Positions 13,701 to 47,582 of a DNA stretch of 64,000 nucleotides are shown here, in pieces. Below the pieces are notes generated by a model that saw only the letters and a list, made by a program, of their open reading frames with translations, searched no databases and had not been told where the DNA came from. The DNA comes from Fimbriosthenelais zetlandica. Lineage: Eukaryota. The position numbers and the translations under genes are program-made. The stretch is taken from NCBI GenBank assembly GCA_977030845.1, contig OZ365109.1, forward strand, positions 55,118,001 through 55,182,000, given 5' to 3'. How positions within the stretch are numbered: position 1 is the stretch's first letter; each line of letters starts with the position of its first letter.

Positions 13701-14186
13701 ACTAAATGGGAAACTTCGCTGTTCCAAAGAAAGGACACTCTCTTGGGGAAGAGTGGTTTCTTTGTTAGTCATAAAATGCCAACTTGCAGTTTCAATGACT
13801 TGGAACAAGTTCCAATTTTGGATTTCACCCTGCAATAAGCCTGTCAGATTGCCTGTGATTGCCCTGTGATTGATTTAGTTACCTGATCGACCAAGGATGA
13901 AAATAATAATAGAAAAGGACAGATATTAATATGAACAGATAGAATCTCGTGTATGCATGCATAGGGGCGGGGGGTGGTGGTTTGGTAATATTTGATAGTC
14001 CCCATTCAAAAACAGTGCAATATATCGATCGTAAAACTCAAAGCATCATAATTATGAAGATCATCTATGAGGTTTTTCTCAGACATAGTAGGATAAAACA
14101 TTTATTATGCAATGATGTAGAGCCCAGATTTTTCCGTTTAGATTTTAATAGATGAATGATATTTTTCTTGCAGGGAGGTCGTTAAA

Positions 14187-14255
14187 ATGCAACGCCTTGG
14201 AGGCTCTCGGGGTCTCGAAATGGACGAGACAACGTCCATTCTGGAGCACATGCAG
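14187..14255 (+). CDS. SLC38A11: SLC38A11 coding exon 1 (MQRLGGSRGLEMDETTSILEHMQ); exon begins at acceptor 14174
   Basis: ttttcttgcag acceptor, taaaATG start at 14187, CAG|gtgagt donor in phase 0, compatible with exon 2. Assignment rests on phase and position, as the N-terminus is poorly conserved. Confidence 0.7.
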
Positions 14256-17200
14256 GTGAGTACAAATTAAATTTTGATAAATTTAATTAAATGACTTTGA
14301 TATTTAAATTCCAGATCGACAGTAATATTATGTTGACTTATGTTCACAATGTGATATTATACAACTGGTATATATACTCATACAGGGCTGAATTCAATTC
14401 ATATTGATAATTATATTTATAAATTCATATCTGTCCATGGATGGGTGCCGAAATTATGATTGAATGCAGATTACATTGCTACTTCATTACCACACACGTA
14501 TTATATAATGATGGCATCCAGTATGTATGCAGCGTATCAGAGATGTAACCAAGTGGAATGGAATTTCCATGTCATGTAATGCATATAAATTGTATCGATT
14601 ATCAACAACAATGCTAAAGGGGGAACCTGTTGCATAAAGCAATGGATGACAACAGTTTTTTGGGACGTATTAATGGCGTAATATTGCCAGGCTGTTGGAG
14701 GACCCTTTTCGAAAGTTGGGGAGGGAATTATAGATGTTCTAGACCCCGTCAGGAGTTAATCGTTGTATGCAGAATTGGGGGCATGCCATTTTTTCCACGC
14801 CCCCCATTGCTGATCAATATATTTCTGGCTAAACGTGCATCAGTTTGACATATTTTCTTCAGCTTTATCTTTCAAAACATGAACTAAATAGTTTGTGCTG
14901 GTTCAAATTTGTATTTATAATGGTTTATTGGGCCTATACGTCTCCTTATTATACATATGAGGTCTCTGTAAGGTTTCTAACAATCAATATGTCAATATAC
15001 CCTAACGAGGGGACAGACAAATCACTGTCAACTAATGACCGTGCACCACTGAATGAGACTGCTGTAGGCAGTCATATCTTAGAACATTAAACCAGGTCCT
15101 TAGCTTAATGATGATGGCTAGGTGGAGTAGCCGTATGGTTACATGGTTTATTGTAAAGCTTTTCCATATAGGGAGCCAAATGGTTTATTGATTAGGCATA
15201 TACGCAGATCCTACCAACATCTGTCAATAAAAATGTCTGGGTCTTTTCATAGCTGCCCCTAACACAAGCTTGACACTGACAGGAGAGGAATATCACATCA
15301 TGTGTGCAGAGTATTCAACCCGTTGTCAAATGGATTAATTGATATTTTTATACTTAAATGATTCCTGTTTGAAAAACCTTCATATGGTATGTTCTTGTGT
15401 CACAATTTATTAAAAGATCAAGCATGAAGCACCCTATCTCAGCTTGATAATAACAGACAGACAGGGACTGTCATATATCCCAAGAGCAAAAATAGAAATT
15501 GCTGTACCTCCTCAATTTCCCTTGCTTGGCAATGAATTGAAATTCAAGAAGCCAGCAATCCACCTTCAAACACAGTCCTCATATGGTGCGGATCAATAAT
15601 TACAGAGTTTACGATCCCCATAATGACACTCATGTACGCCCTGAGACTATGCAAACAGTGATATGGAACAAGTAGGACACGGACGCCAAGTGGGTTTTAT
15701 CCCACTTATCCCGACTGCAATAATGATATATTTTTCTTGTCAAATTACCCTGAAGGCTTCATTGCCGTTGCCAAGCATTTTGACCTATATTTATGTTTCC
15801 ATAGCAACCCTTCAATGAACAAGCTAGTCAATTTGCCTTTCCGACTGCTCCTTTCATGAACTGTTTATAGAGTGAGAGAAGTTCATGGAAATATTGAAAT
15901 TGAAAAAAAATGGAAAAGAATCGCAATATAATATATTGATAGGAAGCAACATGTAATACATGTACATGATTTTGACAAGATACCCGATTGCCTTGAAACT
16001 TCATTCTTATATCCACAAAAGGCTGACCTAAGCCAAAGCTTCACTAAGGCGATAAAAAGATAAAGCGAAACGAAATGTTTTCACTTACACATATGGCTTT
16101 CTGGGAAAATCAGGTGATATCTAGAGATGATTGGAGACTATCTATAAACCAACTTTTTCTTGGTTAATTCCTCTACAAGAACCTGATCTTGTAGACTGAG
16201 GCCATTCTTTTTAAATGAGAACAGATCAATTCTTCTGCTTAATCGGCTCATTGACATTGTGGGGTCGGTTTGCATAAGATAATTCTGTTTATAGCTCAGG
16301 ACCTCGAGCCTTTCCCGTGTAGGTGGGCCGTTGTATGTATGCCCCTTAATGGAGACCCTGGATCACAGTTGGTCCTTGTGACATTTGTATTGTGTGCCTG
16401 GGGTCAAATACCAATAGTGGACCAGCTGATCCGTTAATGGCTTTAACCTGCTTATCCTTAACAATCAATACCTTTGATCAGGACCTCGTGTCCCGAGGGT
16501 TCTTATGGATTGCAACGTAATCATTTTCTTCCTGAACTTCCCCCCTGGGAGTGAGAAGATGTGATTAAACGCAAATTTTCTCACTGATAAGAAAAAAAAT
16601 CTGAATTGTGTCTGTTCCTCGTGAGAGGAAAAATCGCATAAAATGTTGACATGAACAACTTATGCCCGTCTTCAACACTCTCTGTTGAACAAAATATCAC
16701 TTAAACGTCATAACACAATAGAGATATCTATAGTGCTGGCGATGAAACTTGTTAAAGGCATTGCTTCCAGATTGCTTCAGATTCCACGTCATTCAAACTG
16801 ATACTTAAATGTGTATCTCATAATCTGGACTAGTCAAGTTCTCTATATACTTGATGATATTAAAATAGTGCAACACAGGGCAATATTACAGAACCTTATC
16901 CATTTCTAATATATTAAATTCTCCAAGACCAGTGCGGTTGAAGGGCCACTATCACGGAGACGCATGAATAGATACAACTACAGTTACAGGGTAAATATAT
17001 AACAAATTGAACAACATATTAGTAATATTCTCCGGGTTCTCCCTTCAAAATATTTTGTTGATATGGCAGGATGGCTTTTTTTGATGAACAAAATATTAAA
17101 TACGGGGCTAGACATGAATAGATATGGAAAATATTCCCTTGTGGATTGTTGGGCAAACGACAAAGGTCAGCTTCTGTGTAATAGTGGGTCATATAATGGG

Positions 17201-19500: not shown

Positions 19501-22500
19501 TTATCGCACCGATCTTACATAAATATGGCTTTTACCTCCACACTGTCAATAACCAAAACAAGTAGCCAAGTTAGTAGCTAACTGCAAGGCAATAGTCGCC
19601 AAACCAATCATTTTATTCTTAATTGGCGACAAATGCGAACGGTTGCTGGAGCCATGTATAGACTTAATCAAATTAAATTGGGACGGACTGCATGTCGTCT
19701 GATGAAACCATCCATTTGCCTCCTTCGGTTTACACCTTTTCATCGGTGTCTGCATAATAGTATTTCAGCCAAATTAAATCTAATTCGCACCCAAAATAAT
19801 AATTATGAATCTCGAGAGAATAAGGGCTTCCTAATATGCCATTTCACCAAAATTAAATTATCTAAATTTCCTTCAAAAGATGAAAGACTAAGTGAAATTT
19901 GCAAAGCATTTGACTCTAAATCATGCCATTTTACTGTAATAATCCAAGCTTCCCAGATTTCCTCAAGCAGAAGGATCTAATCAAATCTATGGGAATGCTT
20001 CGTAACGGCAGTCCCAGCTTTTATGTTATCTCCCTCTGACAGACATCTCTGCATGTGAGATTCTCAACTTCCGAGTGGCTGCAGGTTATTCCTGGTTCTC
20101 AACATTCATACAACATTGTTTGATTACCAGTGGCCTGCATGTTATACCGCAGCGAGTAAATGTTGACTGTTGGTTCTATGGAACTCATGTGGTGAGCTTG
20201 TCCATGTTGACACTTCTGGTAAATTCATCAGCGATCCACAAACTTGATTAGTGCTGGGAGGCCAATATAAAGCCCTTTGTCATCAGTCATACACCAGGCG
20301 CCAGAAGGAGAGGGTGGGTGGCACTGTCAGGCCTTTCCCAGATTCTAAGAATCTATGGGAAAATCCTGACAATGCCACATCATTGACCATGCCCAATGTT
20401 CCAATGGCCCTCTACTACATGTTCTACATTAACTACTTTCAGCATCCAAATTCTCTTTAAAAAGAAGATACTTATTAGTAGGCCTATCGGGAAGCTGCCA
20501 TGCCACTTAGAAATGCGATTGACAGTTTGAATGAAATATGAAGATTGGCGCATCCACTCCTATAACAACATTATATGTGACATATAATTATGTATTCTGT
20601 GACAAATAACATCAAATAACGATAGTGATAATTCCACAATTCAATGAGCAGCCTATTTTGTTGCAGATTTATATATAGTAAGCTACAATATCTTTAAGGC
20701 GTGCCAAAAGCAGCCTTATTCCCTACGATATATGTAGAGGGGCCCCTATGTCGTGATTTCATGATACATTTACTGTATGCCAGAATATATCTTGACATTA
20801 TTGGCCTGTTACTAGCATAATTCATACATCACAGGTAATGTACTCTCTGGAAATTAGATTGTGGACAAGAGGACAGACGTGATCCATGACCTTTCCTTCA
20901 TAAATCCTCGCCTGAGGAACATAATTCAATAATCCTCCATTAATGTAGTGGTTTTTCGGGATTTTCAGGAGGTAAAACGTATTTCTTCATTAATGCTGAT
21001 GCGCCACTGGCAGGGCTGCTCCCACTTGATGTGTGTTTGGAGAGAAAAAAGAAATCGTTTCTTGTTCTGTCCATTTTGTCTCAAATTGTCTCAAATTTGT
21101 CCTACCTGTCATTCATGCTCGTCGCTTCATTTTCTTCCCACCCATACCTCATTACTGTTATTTTTCGGATATCAGATTGATAATTAAGATTGAGTAATTA
21201 TATTCCTTGTGTCATTCATCATCTCATCATAGTCACCGTTATTTAATTCCTATGCTTTTTCTGTAATTTGACATGGTTTTATCCCTGAGGATTACTCTTA
21301 CATTAACTGATGACTTTTAGGCCTAAAATCCCGAGTTTGCGGAAGTTCTAGTTGAATAATTCCCATGCATACAAAAGCCGTAGGGTTTTGTGAGACAAAA
21401 TCTTAACTATCTGCTTTTAATTGACAGTTGATCAATTATATAAAGATGTGTCCGAATATTTGGTCAGATTTTAAATATGGCTCTGGAAAAAGGGAGGATG
21501 GGAAGTAAGAATTCAATTGAATTTTTTCCAAAAGAAAAAAATGGAGAGACGTACAGTAATAAGCCATCTCCATGGAGTTTCGTGACCACAGGTGCAACTG
21601 TCTTGAATAACATACTTGTTGTGTACTGGGTCGACCTAAATCCTTCTTTAGTTTACCTATTGAAAAGGATGTCTCCAATTACTGCGAGACGGAGAGGAGA
21701 AAGAGGAGACTTCTTAAAAAAGTAACTCCCCTTTTTGATTTAACAATTGTTAATGAAATGGCCTTTATGGAAACACATAGGCAGTATTTTGGGCATTTCA
21801 CTTTTGTATGAGATTGTACATTTTGTAGAATTTTTAAATGAGTAATCCCGTATTTGAAATAGTATAATTGCAATGAGAATATAGTTGCATCTAGTTGGAA
21901 TTTGGAAAGAATATTGATCAGCCTAAGGTTTTGTCTAAGATTTCGATTATATCTGCGATTATTGCAGTTTGTGTGAATAATTCGTGTTTGTGCAGACCAA
22001 TAAAGATTTGACGACTAGACTTGCAAAGCCTTGGACCCTGCAGCCTTACCCTTAGTGATGTATAAACCATAGCAGAATCTTCTGGCCAACCTTTAATTTT
22101 CCTTGGAAAACTTTTTCTAGCACTGATTGGACTCCTTAAGTCACTTAAAATGGAAAGCCAGCTACTCATCCTTCAGACATTTTTTTACCGACCCATTCTG
22201 ACCTGGAGCCTGGGTGAAAAATAAGCAGAACCAAGTGTTTCCCCTCCTCCCTCAGGCTCATGTATCATCTGCAGACCTTGTAAGCTGCCAGAACTGACAG
22301 GTTTGTGCTCAGGAGACCTCGGTCTTATAGCTGACATCTGAGCTTGTCAACAGAGGAGCTGGTCCAAATAGTGTTGTTCTCATAACTTCATTCACTCTCT
22401 CACTCCTTCACTCCTTTGAAAGTTCAATTCTTCACTCCTCCCTTCCGTCCTTCACCTATACTGTTGTCCCTCCCTCCCTCACGCCCCCCCCCCCCCCCTC

Positions 22501-36175: not shown

Positions 36176-38776
36176 TTAGCAACGCATCAGATTCTAATTG
36201 TACTTGATTCTCATTGCTGTCTATATCGATTACAAATACCTAGCCCACCCAGAAAAGGATATGCATGCTTGTTTTTGTGGAAAGACTGACATCCTGAAGA
36301 TTATTATTATGATATTATAATGGCTTTATTTCAATAGTTTAAATTTACAGTATTGTACAATTAAATTGATGGGAGCAAAGTATATAAAAATTGTACTTTC
36401 CCACCATCCTACTATAGGACCTATTCCTGCACACTTTGATCTGTTTCTGATACATTTGATACCTTTTTCCACCATTTTATTACGTATGAAATTCAGCAAA
36501 AAAGAAATAATATTAATTTGAAGTGGGACTATGAAAATTTTTTTTCCAATGTGAGCAAACTCTTGGTGGAACTGTAGACCCAATAGCTTATGAGCTCATA
36601 CAAGTCTGTAGTACAGAAGTGTCTGTAGCATCCTAGATTCTCTGGAGCCTGTGGTTCCCCTCTCCTGTGGTCCAATGACAAGTAATGAAGACATAGAGAT
36701 ATTCTGGGCTGAGAAGCCATCTCCACCATTGAATCATGTTTATTCTAACCAGTTCCCCACCGTGGAGAGCTTGGTGAAAGGCCCTTCTTTAGATCTAACG
36801 GCCTGAATTCAAGTAAAGGTTGAATGTATATTGATGAGGATAGATCAAAGAGAATTTGTCTTAACTGAATAGGGGACTAACTTATGCGACATGGGCAGCA
36901 AGTGGAGAGGGATGGAGAGACAGACAGAAAGGAGGGAGGGAGAAGGGGGTGGGGGTGAGGGAGAGGGTGAGACAAACGGGCAGACAACATGGGCCAATTA
37001 AAGAACGATTTAACAGTTTTAAAGTATTATCTTTATGTTATAGAAGTCTTTCTTTAAGACATGGTATAATGGTCTTTCTGACATGGTCCTATAAATCTCT
37101 TACATTGACTTTGGGATGCAATACAGCTATGCCATTCCCTGAATCAACTTTATGTTCACCCAGCTGACAGGGTCAAAGTAGATAATCTAATAAAAGCCTG
37201 AAAAGTAACAGTTATAGAAGGTAGTAATTTTACCAAGGCTGCATTGTTAACTTCAGTCTTGGGTGAGGGCCAGCAATGGTCTGACTAAATAACCTTCACG
37301 TCCATGTAATTGCCTTTTAGCAATATACTTAAGACCTCATACAGATCGACTGTAATATTTCCTGGCCGTACATTAGCTACCAAACCTCCAATCATCGTGC
37401 TTGTTCCATATAGAGATGGCTGGTTGTGTGAAGATCGATTAGCCTATCACTGACTGCTTTACTCCAGGTTCCAGCAATGCCTGGTTTGTGGGATGGATAA
37501 TTATATTACACCAGCTATTGTATTCTTCCTTGGGGGTTCATTCGCTGTTTTGTGCTGGCCTCACACGGGACTACATATTATAGGGAACTTGATGGGGAAA
37601 CCGAGACCCGAGGGAATTCATAAAAACTTCTGGCATATGACATTTATGACCGGTTGAAGTCAGATCTCTGCTTTATTTTCACAACTGAAAAAGCCGTGGG
37701 TTAGAATGGGATGAAAAATGGATGTGATATAAATTGCATCAAGCGCTGCAAAACACCTCTTGCCCTCATCTCCATGGGGAGACAACTCAGACAGCATAAT
37801 TCAGAGAGGCCAGTGTATAGTGTGCTACAATAACTGTAAACAAGACTGTGTACTATAAATCCTGAAGATTCGAGATTATATTCCTATGTTTTGCATTTTG
37901 GATCTTGATATTATTCCTCTGTTATTCATGTCGTGGACTTTCCGTAGGCTTGAGCCACGAAAATTCAGGAATTCCTGCAGGAAAGTGTACCTGCAGTACC
38001 AGTAGTACCTGTAGTGCCAGTTGTTAGGACTACCAGTTATTTTATCACTAATAAACAACCCTTGGACATAGTGTCAGCTCTGACCCTTGCTACCACAGCA
38101 CTTTCTTGGTAACATATCTATTCACCTTACTGTCAGCCTTTCTTTGTAAATAGCACTAGAGTAGGATAAACTGTCAGCTATTGCCCTTGCTGGCGCATGA
38201 TGTTGTCAATAAAACCCTAATAAAAACTAAGCTTAGGCCTATGTCAGCTGAAGACTGCAATTATAAGCCACCATTTAGTCCATCAAATCTGATGGACAGA
38301 CAGCTTAAAGTTGGCCTCTATCAGTCAACAAACCAAGTTCTGAGCGATCACATCAATAGCTGAATGTAGGCTACTCTGTCTATAGAATCACGTACATTAC
38401 CCAATCACTTCTAATATAAATACAAAGCCAATTAAGTGTCTGCTCAAAGCACCAAGTATCAATTGCGCCATAGTTTACAGAACCAGAGGTGTTTTATCAT
38501 AGAGGCAATACTTACAATGATATTCACAGATTTAGTCGTATTTGGTCAATGGAATAGTAATAGCCATATTGTTTACAGACAAATAATGGGTTCATATTTC
38601 GGGAGAACGTATGCCCCGAAAAGTATACATCTATGCTGCCGTCTTTCGACTTCCAGTTGATAACTATTTTTTCGGAAGCAATGAATTTTTATATTAACAC
38701 TGCATTATTCTTGTCCAAAGATTTCGAAAGGTGTTTTTTCCTGAGATTAATACATGTTTGCTGTTGCTCTTTGCAG

Positions 38777-38791
38777 AACATTCAGGACTAT
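38777..38791 (+). CDS. SLC38A11: Candidate 15-nt alternative microexon (NIQDY) of SLC38A11
   Basis: tgtttgctgttgctctttgcag|AACATTCAGGACTAT|gtaagt: strong acceptor, consensus donor, multiple of 3, no stop in phase 0, which is the phase of the host intron. Confidence 0.6.
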
Positions 38792-41700
38792 GTAAGTGCT
38801 AATACAGGATTAGAATACAATGTATTATGTAAGGATGTCTTGTAGTTATGTCATATGGATAACAGGTGAAAAATGCTGGCAAACATGGGACTATCCTCTG
38901 TGCAAATTATCAGGAATTTTCTTGTTTCAATGCCCGATTCAATGCTCTATATTTCTATTCATTTTACAAAGAGACATTTAGATAATGTCAGTTCTCAGTG
39001 ATAATTATCAGTGATAATGTTACTTTCCATTGAATGTTGCATTTAATCATAAAAGTATTGTGTTCATGTTAATGAAATGATAGACCTGGAAACTCATTAA
39101 ATTATTAATACCTGATTGAAAAAGATGGCGTATTAGTTTCCTACTTAATTTAATAGGGATCCCATGTTTGCCTATGCCACCACGCTCTATGTAGTTCTCA
39201 CAATCATAGTTAAAATGAAATCTAGCCGAACATAATTGCACCTTATCAATTTGTTGCACTTAGAATGTCAATAGTTTAAGTAATGGAAATAATGCATTGC
39301 ACTAGTCTAGATGTTTGTACTATGTTAGCAGGAGAGAGTGGGTATAGTATGTATCTGTAGTCGTAATATTCACTGATTAGTTCAAAAGATAAAAAAGAAA
39401 ATAATCCATTCATTTCAGAAGCAGAAAAAATCATCATCAATCACTCTTAATTTCTTTTTCAGTGAAATTAGGTAATATTAAATATTGTCTAATTCAAACT
39501 GATTTGCAATTTCGTACTGGTTCACATGGAAATATTCCATACAATGCCTATGAAAAGTGTATATTTGACGTGACAAAGAATAATTCTCATTATAATACAT
39601 GTATCCCTATTATATTCTCGCATAAACCATTAATGATCGACCATGGTCAGATTACGTTATTAATAGATCACTCTCAGCGCGCAATATTATTGATTAAAGG
39701 ATATTTTCCCCACTGTATAGGCTTATAAATTGATGAATGAATTCGAAAGTTAAAATATCCCCTCGATCAGCTTCCTGGAAGCCGGGCCTGGAAGTCGAAC
39801 CCTCCTGTATTTTCTAAGCCATTAAAGATAAAAATTGATTTCAACTGACATTACCATATCCGATTTCATTTGTAAACTTAAAAAAATTCCCTATTAATTC
39901 ACTTCATCTTATTAAAGCAGAAGGAATGAGATTTGTTTTGAACCAATCTGCTCATACAGTAGTATCAGATCCACACTGAACTTCCACGTGCGTGGCTTAT
40001 TTTATCACCGTTTTGTAAGTAATTTTAGCCACGAGAGGAATGATTGACCCAAATTTGACCCAAGAAATTAATCTTGGATCAGCTAATGTCAATTTTTTCT
40101 TTTGAAGTGAACCATCCGATTAAATAATGATACATGTTAATTAGAATTAAATCGCTTGGTCGAATGCTCCAGTTTAAAAAAAATCTTCATAGGGTAAATA
40201 TTTATAGGCACTTTTTATTCACTTATGTATATAATATGTCTACGAATTCTTAGCCTGGATTCATGGTCGGTATCTCAAACGTCACCATAGACATTTTCTC
40301 TGTTATTTAAAAAGTGCTCTACCTGGGCCGGTAGAGAACGATTGCCTATTTCACCGGCATAGTATATGTATGGTTTTCTGATTCCATTATGTAACTATTA
40401 CTCAGCATGATGGGTGTTTGAGGGGAATTAACGTTTGTCCATATATATTTTCCCTTTTAGCTTCTTTCCTCTGCCCAGAGGCAGGCACTTGACAGCGCAT
40501 TCCACCTTGATTGCCCATGGGATCGTCTGCCATTAATCTATTGGTGATGGGGCAGGCACGGTTCATATAAAAATACTTCACACTGTACATCCCTCACAAA
40601 GTGGAGCTCCCACTGCCAGTCTGGTTTCTCCTCTAAACTTGCACAGAAAGAGATTAGAAGGGTCTTAATTGATAATTATTTAATGATTGTTTCAGGCATA
40701 TTGGTATGTATTAGATACAGGTCTTTCAGCCCAAAGTAAACCTGCTGTTTTGTCGGTATTAACTGTATCCCATTGCAATCTGGTTGGAATTTTATAGAAG
40801 TAGAACCCCTCTCAAAGAACTCGCTAAACTCGGAGGTGAAACCAGCGGGCCTTGTAATTGACCATGGACCTTGCTGACGCCATTATCATTAATTCACTAA
40901 GCAAGTATACTCGCTTGTCCTGGATTTTGTATTGCTCAGCAAGAAGTTAGCTCTACTGATCTTGTATTCCTTTAGTCGGAATCCACTTATCAGACGGCCA
41001 GCTGTGAGCATCAATGTGAATGCACTAGCATTGAGCATGCAGAACTAACTTATCCTATTTCTGTCAACCCACATTTAAGAAGAGTGACAACTTTGGCTTT
41101 CATGCGCATGCCTTGAAACATCTTATGTATCACGTGACGAGAGTGAGCGATAATGAGTGAAATGTTAGACCTATGGCCTGACCGGAAGAGCTCATGAAAT
41201 AACTTATGACGGGTACTGGTTATAGGCATGACATCGGGATTATAAGTTATGGTAAGGACGTGGGTCAAAACACTATCACTGATGCTTGCTGAAGTAGGAC
41301 CCAGTTTTATGTCTACATTGTATTTTAAAATTCAATAGCTTCCATCAATTTCACTTGATTTTTAACATGAATTCATTTGTCCAGTCTCGGTCTTTGTCTC
41401 TATCATTGGCTACTTGTAAACCAAGAATATCCACGCGGTAAACTATGCCATATAGGCTACATTATAGCCTACAGAAAAGGCACCCTTCCTTTCTCATGAC
41501 ATGCTCTGGTCTAAACCGTCGATGGCGTCCTCGTTAGTTGTTCACAGTTGATAACGAAAATAGTAATGAGCTGCATGAAATGACTATGTTGGCAGTTGTC
41601 AGTATTTTTATGCCTCGTGTTAATGCAGAGCTCCCCAGATAAGATATGTTATAATATCTGAAGCCTCTTCTAATGAGGAAAACCTAGACCTTGATCTCGA

Positions 41701-44700: not shown

Positions 44701-47178
44701 TGCATTTTCAGCAAAACAGGATTATGATTGACCTCGGAAATGGCAAGGATGGATCCTGGGGGAGAGGTTATGGTGGTCTTGACAGATTCCCCCCCCCCAT
44801 TTTTGCCTCTAAAATAATAATATTTGTGCCACAAGTCTTGAGCTATTTATCATAAAATCCGCCCCTGAATGGTATCATTATTCGGCAGAAACATGTTCTC
44901 TCGATACCTCTCACCTTAGCGTCCTTGACCATTTATTTCACCAAGACAATCATCATTAGTTCGTCTCTCCCTGTGCCAAACTCCACCTTTAACTACTTTC
45001 AACTAATATATTCATGCTGCCCCCGGGACCTTAAAATATATGCTGATTTCCCCGGGGACAATATATACATACCTCTCATCACTTTTCTAATATTCCCTAA
45101 TGAGAAACTTCCAGGTGCAATTTATCACACCGGGAAAAATAAATCCCGGGTCTTGAGTTTCTTTTGTCGCGTGGTTTTCTCATATATTTCCATCGGAGTC
45201 TGAGATTCTCTCTTGATCCATACTCCAGCTGCCGGTGGGGTTCCTTTCCCCAGGCTTAATGGCCTGGGTATAATGGATGGGCTGAGGACTATTATAATAG
45301 TACTTCCTTGCTAGGTCCTATTTGCTAGTGTATCCATGAAGGAACAGTTCAATCTACAGCAACCTTATAGGTCTCGCCCCAGCGAAATTTAATATTATAT
45401 TTCAGTACTCATTATAATTATTAGCACCCTGTGTATATTTCCAACTCAGTTTTATAAATTGAATCTGGAACTCTCCGGGAAAGACTATTTGTCTAACTCA
45501 AAGGTCACGGTTCTAAGTTCTGACCTTTCTGGATTGACGACCCGGGGCTCACAAGGCAGAGACTAGCAATCTTCCATCTTACATTTGTACTTCCTCTAAA
45601 CTTACGAAAATACAAGTTAGTTGCGCATTCATTCACAGAAAATAAGTTTCTGTATCATTCTGAAACTAATCTAATCGATTTAAATTTGGCAAATTCTAAT
45701 TTCACAAGTCTTGAACCGTGGTTCATTTGACCCCATGGTCTGCACCATTCTTCTTGCCTGTTAATTAAATGTGAGAATGTTTATTGATCAAACAGTAGTA
45801 ACTTCTGAATGTCCATCCTGATCAGTTTCTATTGGAAGTCCGAACTATATCCTGAGATGAACCCTGGTCTTAGTTTGCAGAGCTTGGGTCAATTTCCGCA
45901 ATGTTTTTATTGAAGACTGATAAGGATAGAGGTCATGATAGAAGGGTTTGTCTCATTCTCTCGGGATCAAGTCTCCTGCACTAACCATGCAGTCTGCTCC
46001 AGACCCCTGCAGATTGGATCTAGCTGTCCCAATCTGCTGCAGATTGAATGCAGTCCGCTGCAGGTTGTCTCTAGTCTCCCTGCAGCCTTGGTTCATTACA
46101 ATTTGTTCAGCCTCCTTGCAGATTGCTCTTGCCTACATTTTATCCTTCATAGCCCTGTACAACCTGACTATGACAGGAAATAAATCAGTCATACTTCCAT
46201 GTTCTTAATTTTAGATAAATCGTTTGTGTTGATAAAATCTTCAGTAGGCCTACTAGATCTGTCTTCTCTAGGGAAGAGACTGAATTAGCTTCTTTTACTT
46301 ACCTCTACTTGGTACTACACATAATTTTTGTGGCATACAACAGTTTTATTGATAAAGTATAGAGGAGTATGCATCCCATAATTATGCACCATTCTGTTAT
46401 TAGAAATGAACATTGTAATTTAATTGTAGAAAGTTTTACACCTGCAGATATTTACGATTCATCTCATTCAGGCAAATTGTTGAAAAATGTTGGATGTTGA
46501 TGAACATTTGGAGACAGTGTTATTCTTTTTGTTAATAAAAGGCAGCGACTTGCTCTGAATGGGGCCACTGAGCAATATTTTCCATCCATTGAACACGATG
46601 ACTATTTGTCAACCAGCCACAAAGTGTGCCTCAATTGAAAAATTATTTAATCCAAAATGGACGACTGTAAAATAAGATAAAATACTGTCGGTAAAGCCAG
46701 ATTTATTATTCTTCCTCATGGAAGCTCCTTCCTAATGATTCGTATTAAGATTTGTTTTTATGTACAAATATAACACGATATTAATTTAATTCTCATAATG
46801 ATGGAATATTTCACGGTTTATCCTCGATCTTTGATGCAATATTTTAAAATGTCCCTGTCCTAGTCCACCTTTAGAAGTCATAATTCAGTTATGATACTGC
46901 TGCACAGAACAGAGAACATGTACAAAGCCTATTGTCCAAGCTATTTCGTTGCATTGTGCTTGCATCGCGTTGTCATGATTTGTGTTAGCCTGCAGTGCTG
47001 ACGATCTTTGGGATCAGATAATTTCATCTAGCCATTGTCCGGCCAAATATATTTAGATTGAAATGTTACATGACCACCGTTTAGGTGTAAGGTAAAATGT
47101 TTCTGTGCAACTCGTTCTTTCATTTCCAAGATTGGATCGTTGGTTATACTGATGTGTTTGCTTCTTGCTCCATTACAG

Positions 47179-47332
47179 CAGATGCCAGACACGCCTGAGT
47201 CATCAAAGAGTGGGATCAGTGACCTGCATCAACTTGTCGCTGACGATGACCCCCAACCCGATAAGAACCGTTCCAGCATTCCCATGGCTTCTTTTAATTT
47301 CATCAACAGCATCATAGGATCGGGAATAATAG
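47179..47332 (+). CDS. SLC38A11: SLC38A11 exon 2 (QMPDTPE...FNFINSIIGSGIIG, TM1)
   Basis: tacag|cag|ATG tandem acceptor, AG|gtcagt donor in phase 1; conserved TM1 motif. Confidence 0.95.
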
Positions 47333-47374
47333 GTCAGTTACTGCCTTGTGTTCACAATGATCTACTGTAGGGGT

Positions 47375-47582
47375 GGGACGCTGCATGGTTCAGTCGGCAG
47401 AGTGCTCGCTTTGAATGTGGGAGGTCCTGGTTTCAATTCCCTAAATATTGTTCAAATTTGCCAAACGTGGCACTTCCCCATCCAGTGCTGCTAACTGGGA
47501 TATCCAAGGTCAGCAACATCTCATACTACCTGTAGTATGAGGCATAGGCTAAGAACTATTGCTGCCCCACGAGAAGAGCGTT
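47375..47582 (+). mobile_element. tRNA-derived SINE copy
   Basis: tRNA-like head with A-box TGGTTCAGTCGG (47386-47397), anticodon-like stem-loop and degenerate B-box GGTTTCAATTCC (47429-47440), followed by an unrelated body with a hairpin at 47520-47541. The 3' end is approximate. Confidence 0.7.

What the first reader, a model, noticed from the sequence alone, without database searches (positions are those of the whole stretch)
38740..38800. 15-nt in-frame microexon (NIQDY) hidden in the 33-kb intron
Seen: tgtttgctgttgctctttgcag|aacattcaggactat|gtaagt, with a perfect donor, a strong acceptor with TGC motifs in the pyrimidine tract, a length divisible by 3, and no stop in the host intron's phase 0. 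Established: UGC motifs just upstream of the 3' splice site mark eMIC/SRRM-dependent neural microexons in bilaterians. Inference: a probably neural isoform inserting NIQDY into the cytosolic N-terminal tail between exon 1 and exon 2; annotation pipelines commonly miss exons of this size.
Basis: partly seen in the sequence, partly recalled or inferred. Interest (0 to 1): 0.7.

Follow-up and report, generated by a model that had tools for sequence, protein, structure and literature searches.

The report
Unproven 15-base microexon candidate in SLC38A11
A 15-base stretch with very good splice signals really does sit in the long first coding intron of a worm amino-acid transporter gene (SLC38A11) and could add five residues to the protein's tail, but no RNA data or conserved copy could be found, so it is about equally likely to be a real minor exon or a chance look-alike.

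Summary
Window 38777-38791 (AACATTCAGGACTAT, NIQDY) follows a pyrimidine-rich acceptor with three TGC motifs. It is followed by GTAAGT and keeps the frame between the exon ending at 14255 and the exon starting at 47179. The host gene is a single-copy SLC38A11 orthologue in an annelid-like genome.

For use as an exon:
- Its splice sites are as strong as the host gene's real ones.
- Chance gives about 0.2 such in-frame candidates per intron of this size, and about 0.02 with two or more TGC.
- The genome encodes an SRRM C-terminal domain.
- The same intron holds annotated alternative cassette exons in a ribbon worm (60 and 27 nt) and in an oyster (51 nt).

Against:
- No sequencing run was listed, so junctions could not be tested.
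- The two nearest transcript-derived proteins have no insert at this junction.
- One complete orthologous intron, and 10 kb of another, contain nothing similar.
- An equally good 24-nt candidate lies in the same intron.
- A looser genome-wide motif is only 1.3 times its control.

I put a real alternative microexon at about 0.47 and the neural, eMIC-dependent reading at about 0.25. If real, it is an ordinary new member of a known kind. The scan had already noted this gene and other microexons in this genome.

The parts
14174..14255 (+). Upstream exon of SLC38A11.
   Evidence: tblastn of P0182 aligns ESVKMQRLG...HILEN to 14175-14258. An acceptor ttcttgcag ends at 14173 and the frame is open upstream of the ATG.
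38747..38751 (+). Possible branch point TTAAT (yUnAy), 26 nt upstream of the acceptor AG. The nearest upstream AG lies 31 nt from the acceptor.
   Evidence: Sequence reading. Inferred only.
38757..38776 (+). Acceptor region tttgctgttgctctttgcag. It is 76% pyrimidine over -20..-4 and has three TGC motifs at -18, -12 and -5.
   Evidence: Rough acceptor score 6.6, at or above all 12 real acceptors of the host gene.
38777..38791 (+). Candidate 15-nt cassette AACATTCAGGACTAT (NIQDY), in frame with both neighbouring exons and without a stop.
   Evidence: Single copy in the genome. No transcript or conservation evidence.
38792..38797 (+). Donor GTAAGT, with TAT as the last three exon bases.
   Evidence: Only 3 of the 11 real donors of the host gene match GTRAGT.
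47179..47332 (+). Downstream exon (QMPDTPESS...SFNFINSIIGSGII), with a CAGCAG tandem acceptor (47179 or 47182) and donor gtcagt.
   Evidence: Relatives start this exon two residues before PDTPES.

Best explanation
The site is a lineage-restricted alternative cassette microexon of SLC38A11. On this reading the 33-kb intron is removed in two steps in a subset of transcripts. The exon ending at 14255 is joined to 38777, and 38791 is joined to 47179 or 47182. This inserts Asn-Ile-Gln-Asp-Tyr into the cytosolic N-terminal tail about 45 residues before the first membrane helix. A 15-nt exon is too short for normal exon definition, so its inclusion would depend on an activator bound at the UGC-rich stretch between branch point and AG. 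The obvious candidate is the Srrm234/eMIC protein in neurons. Shown: the sequence anatomy, frame preservation, site strength, rarity by chance, presence of an SRRM_C exon in the genome, and use of the same intron for alternative cassettes in other lophotrochozoans. Inferred: that it is spliced at all, the tissue, the activator, and any effect on the transporter.
For: 1) The exact motif, frame and three TGC are present. 2) Acceptor score 6.6 and donor score 6.4 are within or above the range of the host gene's real sites. They are similar to a 24-nt spectrin microexon of this genome that another agent reported as conserved (total 12.7 against 13.0, similar ctgttgc...ag acceptor). 3) Chance expectation is 0.2 per intron from real genomic background and 0.23 from shuffles, falling to 0.023 with two or more TGC. 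4) The intron holds 4 in-frame candidates scoring 10 or more against 0.8-1.1 expected. 5) Annotated alternative cassettes lie in the homologous phase-0 intron of Lineus longissimus (60 nt and 27 nt, L008:16578 and L008:17327) and Ostrea edulis (51 nt, L031:9561). Saccostrea has one at the protein level. In the Lineus control, my scan ranked the two true cassettes 3rd and 4th, with lower scores (11.2, 10.7) than NIQDY. 6) SRRM_C (PF15230) matches above its cut-off at G000:C11:15909256. 7) UGC between branch point and AG is reported in about 75-79% of SRRM3/4-dependent microexons (bioRxiv 10.1101/2024.09.17.613571) and is enriched at fly and mammalian eMIC exons (PMC8797185). 8) The site does not lie in a repeat.
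Against: No RNA evidence of any kind was available; none was listed. P0181 and P0182, the nearest transcript-like orthologues, read ...HILDHQ|YVPDTPESS and ...HILENQ|YVPDTPESS with no insert, and each is alone in its 90% cluster. The complete orthologous intron in L029 and 10 kb upstream of exon 2 in L001 have no similar microexon. A higher-scoring 24-nt candidate (22256-22279) in the same intron, and two unannotated top candidates in the Lineus intron, show that such scores do not prove use. Genome-wide, TTGC..TGCAG..3-30 nt..GTAAGT occurs 191 times against 145 for the reversed control. TGC also occurs in two constitutive acceptors of this gene. The AG exclusion zone is only 31 nt.
Confidence: 0.47

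Rival explanations
1. It is a chance pseudo-exon. A good acceptor and a consensus donor happen to lie 15 nt apart in a 33-kb intron, and the spliceosome ignores them because a 15-nt unit without dedicated enhancers is not defined as an exon. The site then has no function.
For: About 0.2 equally good in-frame candidates are expected per intron of this size, and the scan has read hundreds of windows of this genome. There is no insert in the two nearest transcripts and no counterpart in one complete and one partial orthologous intron. Another candidate of equal or better quality lies in the same intron. The loose genome-wide motif is barely above control, 191 against 145. TGC in acceptor tracts is not exclusive to microexons here.
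Against: With two or more TGC the chance expectation drops to about 0.02 per intron, and none of 24 background candidates had three TGC. The intron has more good in-frame candidates than expected. The homologous intron is a proven site of alternative cassettes in two other phyla.
Confidence: 0.45
2. It is a real microexon but not neural or eMIC-dependent. It would be included broadly at low level, or in another tissue, through its strong core splice sites alone. This is a subset of the best explanation and differs only in regulation.
For: Both splice sites are strong rather than the weak-acceptor type described for eMIC exons, and the AG exclusion zone is short at 31 nt (PMC8797185). The Lineus and oyster cassettes in this intron carry no evidence of tissue specificity.
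Against: Three UGC close to the AG are the hallmark of SRRM-responsive exons. Whole-animal-type transcripts of relatives lack an insert.
Confidence: 0.2
3. It is part of another transcript on the + strand (a nested gene, a non-coding RNA exon or an alternative 5' leader), or a recursive-splicing intermediate used to remove the long intron.
For: The intron is long (32.9 kb), and alternative first exons are common in SLC38A11 of molluscs.
Against: The intron has no ORF longer than 119 aa and no Rfam family. The bases after the acceptor AG are AACATT, so joining to the upstream exon does not recreate a 5' splice site, and the recursive-site definition is not met.
Confidence: 0.05

Closest known systems
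SRRM3/4 (eMIC)-dependent neural microexons of bilaterians (PMC8797185; bioRxiv 10.1101/2024.09.17.613571)
   Same: Length 15 nt, frame-preserving, inside a long intron, UGC motifs between branch point and AG, CU/U-rich tract, and a strong donor as in mammalian microexons. The genome encodes an SRRM_C domain.
   Different: No expression, tissue or dependence data. The AG exclusion zone is short (31 nt) and the acceptor is strong rather than weak. The site is not conserved in the relatives that could be examined.
Annotated alternative cassettes in the homologous SLC38A11 intron of Lineus longissimus (isoforms X1-X4: 60 nt and 27 nt) and of oysters (Ostrea edulis 51 nt, Saccostrea echinata 45 nt)
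   Same: Same phase-0 intron between the ...HIL... exon and the exon that encodes the start of helix 1. All lengthen the cytosolic N-terminal tail. The Lineus 60-nt cassette also has a tttgctttgcag acceptor.
   Different: No sequence similarity to NIQDY. Those cassettes lie 1.7-2.5 kb upstream of the next exon, whereas this one lies 8.4 kb upstream. Those are in RefSeq models; this one has no annotation or RNA support available here.
Intronic pseudo-exons (splice-site pairs that are never used)
   Same: An isolated site pair in a very long intron, with no conservation and no transcript evidence. Comparable candidates occur at about 0.2 per 33 kb.
   Different: Three UGC motifs, and an excess of in-frame candidates in this particular intron.
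Recursive splice sites (ratchet points) of long invertebrate introns
   Same: Lies deep inside a 33-kb intron and combines an acceptor with a GTAAGT donor.
   Different: Acceptor and donor are separated by 15 nt, and the exon does not begin with GT, so no 5' splice site is regenerated.

Membership tests
eMIC/SRRM-dependent neural microexon | Exon of 3-27 nt that preserves the reading frame | tested here: met
   15 nt with no stop. Upstream exon ends in phase 0 and downstream exon starts in phase 0.
eMIC/SRRM-dependent neural microexon | UGC motif(s) close to the 3' splice site, between branch point and AG | tested here: met
   TGC at -18, -12 and -5. Two or more TGC together with this score are expected 0.023 times per intron.
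eMIC/SRRM-dependent neural microexon | Long AG exclusion zone / long branch point to AG distance with a weak 3' splice site | tested here: not met
   The nearest upstream AG is 31 nt away and the acceptor score is among the best in the gene. The spectrin microexon of this genome has 53 nt.
eMIC/SRRM-dependent neural microexon | Regulator present: Srrm234 with the C-terminal eMIC-containing domain | tested here: met
   PF15230 SRRM_C, 31.8 bits against a cut-off of 27, at G000:C11:15909256-15909330. One exon only; the eMIC isoform itself was not examined.
eMIC/SRRM-dependent neural microexon | Inclusion in mRNA, enriched in neurons and dependent on the regulator | not testable with these tools
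   No sequencing run was listed for this genome, so read laying could not be used.
eMIC/SRRM-dependent neural microexon | Conservation of the exon and its flanks in related species | tested here: not met
   There is no counterpart in the full orthologous intron of L029, in 10 kb of L001, or in transcripts P0181 and P0182. All are distant relatives (54-75% protein identity); no close relative was reachable.
SLC38A11 N-terminal-tail alternative cassettes (Lineus, oysters) | Cassette located in the phase-0 intron between the HIL-motif exon and the helix-1 exon | tested here: met
   for the known cases; for this one.
SLC38A11 N-terminal-tail alternative cassettes (Lineus, oysters) | Homology of the inserted peptide | tested here: not met
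   NIQDY has no resemblance to GAQPHFQK..., EEKNETKSK or DS.T..STGDS.RN..
Recursive splice site | Acceptor AG directly followed by GTRAGT, so that a 5' splice site is regenerated | tested here: not met
   AG is followed by AACATT.

The most novel reading that the evidence does not exclude
The first coding intron of SLC38A11 is a recurrent site where short tail-lengthening cassette exons arise independently in different lophotrochozoan lineages: annelid 15 nt and perhaps 24 nt, nemertean 60 and 27 nt, oyster 45-51 nt. In this worm the cassettes would form a small UGC-marked array, read by the neural Srrm234 programme, that tunes the transporter's cytosolic tail.
Probability: 0.2. Interest if true: 0.45.

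Novelty: new member of a known kind. Interest (0 to 1): 0.28.

Why it matters
If real, this would be one more unannotated microexon, in an orphan amino-acid transporter whose N-terminal tail is alternatively lengthened in at least two other phyla. That would hint that the tail is a regulated module, for sorting, phosphorylation or partner binding. It would also add an annelid example to the UGC/eMIC splicing code. It would not change any general view. If it is a pseudo-exon, it shows that splice-site quality plus UGC motifs alone cannot call microexons.

Tried and rejected
1) RNA evidence. The look-up of sequencing runs with exon 2 (kind rna) and with the last exon plus 3' flank (kind any) listed no run, so read laying could not be used.

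2) Own or near-species proteins. Nothing at 95% identity or more exists in the protein collections. The best exon hit was 90% (P0016) on a 1.8-kb genomic contig.

3) A closer relative with long contigs (ERZ26052378; P0020, P0166) could not be read because the sample file is too large.

4) The Owenia protein P0184 is not on record for locus retrieval. The Lamellibrachia locus L007 begins downstream of the intron.

5) A metagenome scan for the back-translated microexon with splice sites gave three contigs of one element (L004-L006). They have no SLC38A11 exon and were judged to be chance; about one hit family was expected.

6) The Amphiura X1/X2 isoform difference lies elsewhere in the protein.

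8) Walking further upstream in L001 was not possible. The only called ORF there is a reverse-transcriptase fragment with a GTG start.

9) The resemblance between the QDY end of NIQDY and the QY at the junction in relatives was rejected. By homology the Y is the first codon of their exon 2.

10) The nested-gene, Rfam RNA, tRNA and recursive-site readings found no support. There is no paralogue or second copy of the motif, and no paper links SLC38A11 to microexons.
Full report
**Observation.**
- The acceptor tract tgtttgctgttgctctttgcag ends at 38776.
- AACATTCAGGACTAT (NIQDY) occupies 38777-38791, and gtaagt follows at 38792-38797.
- TGC occurs at -18, -12 and -5 relative to the exon.
- The upstream coding exon reads MQRLGGSRGLEMDETTSILEHMQ (14187-14255, 69 nt, donor gtgagt).
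- The downstream exon starts at 47179 behind a CAGCAG tandem acceptor and encodes QMPDTPESS...SFNFINSIIGSGII.
- Inclusion of the 15-mer therefore keeps the frame.

**Host gene.** The gene is an SLC38A11 orthologue.
- All later exons lie in the window, up to about 62.2 kb.
- It is about 75% identical to two transcript-like JGI proteins, P0181 and P0182. It is about 60% identical to the Owenia, Lineus and Lingula proteins.
- Both the gene and the 27-mer around the candidate are single copy in the 447-Mb genome.

**Chance.** I scored acceptors by pyrimidine log-odds plus YAG.
- The candidate scores 6.6 (acceptor) plus 6.4 (donor), 13.0 in total. This is inside or above the range of the host gene's own sites. 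Only 3 of the 11 real donors match GTRAGT.
- I scanned 494 kb-strand of this genome: 200 kb sampled from contig 1, the rest of the window, and the antisense strand of the intron. In-frame, stop-free AG...GT pairs of 30 nt or less scoring 13 or more occur 3 times, which is 0.2 per 33 kb. None of the 24 background candidates had three TGC.
- Three hundred dinucleotide shuffles of the intron give 0.23 per intron, and 0.023 when two or more TGC are also required.
- The intron holds four candidates scoring 10 or more, against 0.8-1.1 expected. They are 22256 (24 nt), 38777 (15 nt), 45229 (6 nt) and 20043 (12 nt).
- After setting aside the candidate that drew attention to this intron, the excess is only marginal (P about 0.05).
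- Genome-wide, the loose pattern TTGC..TGCAG..3-30 nt..GTAAGT occurs 191 times against 145 for the reversed control, and part of the excess is a repeat family. This architecture by itself is mostly noise.
- TGC also occurs in the acceptors of the two flanking constitutive exons.

**RNA evidence.** None could be obtained. Neither exon 2 nor the terminal exon region returned any listed run, so read laying was unusable. The protein collections contain nothing from this species.

**Comparative evidence: transcripts.** The two nearest transcript-derived proteins read ...HILDHQ|YVPDTPESS and ...HILENQ|YVPDTPESS. This is the same junction with no extra residues, and neither has a second isoform in its cluster.

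**Comparative evidence: orthologous introns.**
- From exon-2 ORF fragments I fetched genomic loci of two more distant relatives.
- In L029 (ERZ24900295) I located exon 1 (MDETRHILERVQ|gtgaat) and exon 2. The whole 14.9-kb orthologous intron has no NIQDY-like unit, and its best candidate scores 10.6 with an unrelated peptide.
- In L001 the 10 kb upstream of exon 2 likewise holds nothing similar.
- A metagenome scan for the back-translated exon with its splice sites found one unrelated element.
- All these relatives are distant, at 54-75% protein identity. No close relative could be read.

**Comparative evidence: the same intron in other phyla.** RefSeq isoforms of other lophotrochozoans show that this intron is a recurrent site of alternative cassettes.
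- Lineus longissimus isoforms X1-X4 differ by a 20-residue and a 9-residue insert exactly at this junction.
- In the Lineus genome these are a 60-nt exon (L008:16578-16637, acceptor tcctttgctttgcag) and a 27-nt exon (L008:17327-17353), inside an 18-kb intron.
- Ostrea edulis has a 51-nt cassette (L031:9561-9611) inside a 10.7-kb intron. Saccostrea echinata has a 45-nt one at the protein level.
- As a control, my scan of the Lineus intron ranked the two true cassettes 3rd and 4th, with scores 11.2 and 10.7. Both are below the NIQDY score. Two higher-scoring candidates there are unannotated.

**Machinery and comparison within this genome.**
- The genome has a match to SRRM_C (PF15230) above its cut-off.
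- A 24-nt beta-spectrin microexon was reported as conserved by another agent of this scan. I located it at G000:C11:6176292. Its acceptor...tctctctccgttttgtgttctgttgcacag, is in a similar style, and its total score is 12.7.

**Literature.**
- UGC between branch point and AG is found in 74-79% of SRRM3/4-dependent microexons, and it matters for the response (10.1101/2024.09.17.613571).
- Fly and mammalian eMIC exons share UGC enrichment, CU-rich tracts, long AG exclusion zones and strong branch points (PMC8797185).
- The candidate meets the UGC and tract features. It does not meet the long exclusion zone (31 nt) or the weak acceptor.

**Weighing.**
- Site quality alone gives modest odds, because pseudo-exons of this quality are common.
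- The UGC cluster, the excess of candidates in this intron and the proven use of the homologous intron for cassettes elsewhere raise the odds.
- Absence from two relatives' transcripts and from one and a half orthologous introns lowers them somewhat.
- The known cassettes in this intron are themselves not conserved between lineages, so non-conservation counts only weakly.
- I estimate about 0.47 that the 15-mer is spliced into some mRNAs, about 0.25 that it is a neural eMIC-type exon as proposed, and about 0.45 that it is an unused pseudo-exon.

**Mechanism if real (inferred).** Recognition of the UUAAU branch site, and of the first AG downstream at 38775-76, would be helped by an SRRM-type activator on the UGC repeats. 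The consensus donor would pair fully with U1. The product would carry five extra residues, including a tyrosine, in the acidic Ser/Thr-Pro-rich cytosolic tail ahead of helix 1.

**Novelty.** If real, this is a new member of a known kind and of modest interest. No paper connects SLC38A11 with microexons.

Noticed in passing
window 22256-22279 (+): A second in-frame, stop-free candidate cassette lies in the same intron: cccctcctccctcag|GCTCATGTATCATCTGCAGACCTT|gtaagc (24 nt, AHVSSADL). Its rough score of 15.3 is higher than the NIQDY site, and it has no TGC. The surrounding sequence is mostly unique in the genome.
   Followed up: partly
window 45229-45234 and 20043-20054 (+): Two weaker in-frame mini-cassette candidates (6 nt LP, score 12.9; 12 nt TSLH, score 11.9). 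With the two above, the intron has four candidates scoring 10 or more against about one expected.
   Followed up: partly
window 38786-38791 (+): An internal acceptor (cattcag|GACTAT|gtaagt) could give a 6-nt version (DY) of the same microexon.
   Followed up: no
P0182 has a matching in-frame extension (MTALAPEKAESVKMQRLG). The true start codon may therefore lie in an upstream exon, and this would then be exon 2.
   Followed up: partly
window 47173-47184 (+): A CAGCAG tandem (NAGNAG) acceptor at the exon after the long intron could add or drop one Gln. Homology with relatives favours 47179.
   Followed up: partly
window 47366-47440 (+): A tRNA-like stretch (GGTTCAGTCGG...GGTTTCAATTCC) sits just downstream of exon 2 and looks like a tRNA-derived SINE remnant. 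ARAGORN calls no tRNA in the window.
   Followed up: partly
L008 7200-7232 and 11944-11985 (Lineus longissimus SLC38A11 intron): Two unannotated in-frame candidates (33 nt and 42 nt) score higher (19.4 and 15.6) than the two annotated cassettes of that intron. They are either missed exons or strong pseudo-exons.
   Followed up: no
G000:C11:15909256-15909330 (+): A single-exon match to the SRRM C-terminal domain (PF15230, 31.8 bits), probably the Srrm234 orthologue of this genome.
   Followed up: no
L004 9928-9950, L005 839-861, L006 9928-9950: Three JGI metagenome contigs share an element with caaacaccag|AAYATACAAGATTAT|gtgagt, which also reads NIQDY. No SLC38A11 exon is nearby and the frame stays open past the GT. 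I judged this to be chance.
   Followed up: partly
L030 1463-1535 (G000:C11, beta-spectrin): The 24-nt spectrin microexon noted elsewhere in this scan shares the heptamer CTGTTGC in its acceptor tract with the NIQDY candidate.
   Followed up: partly
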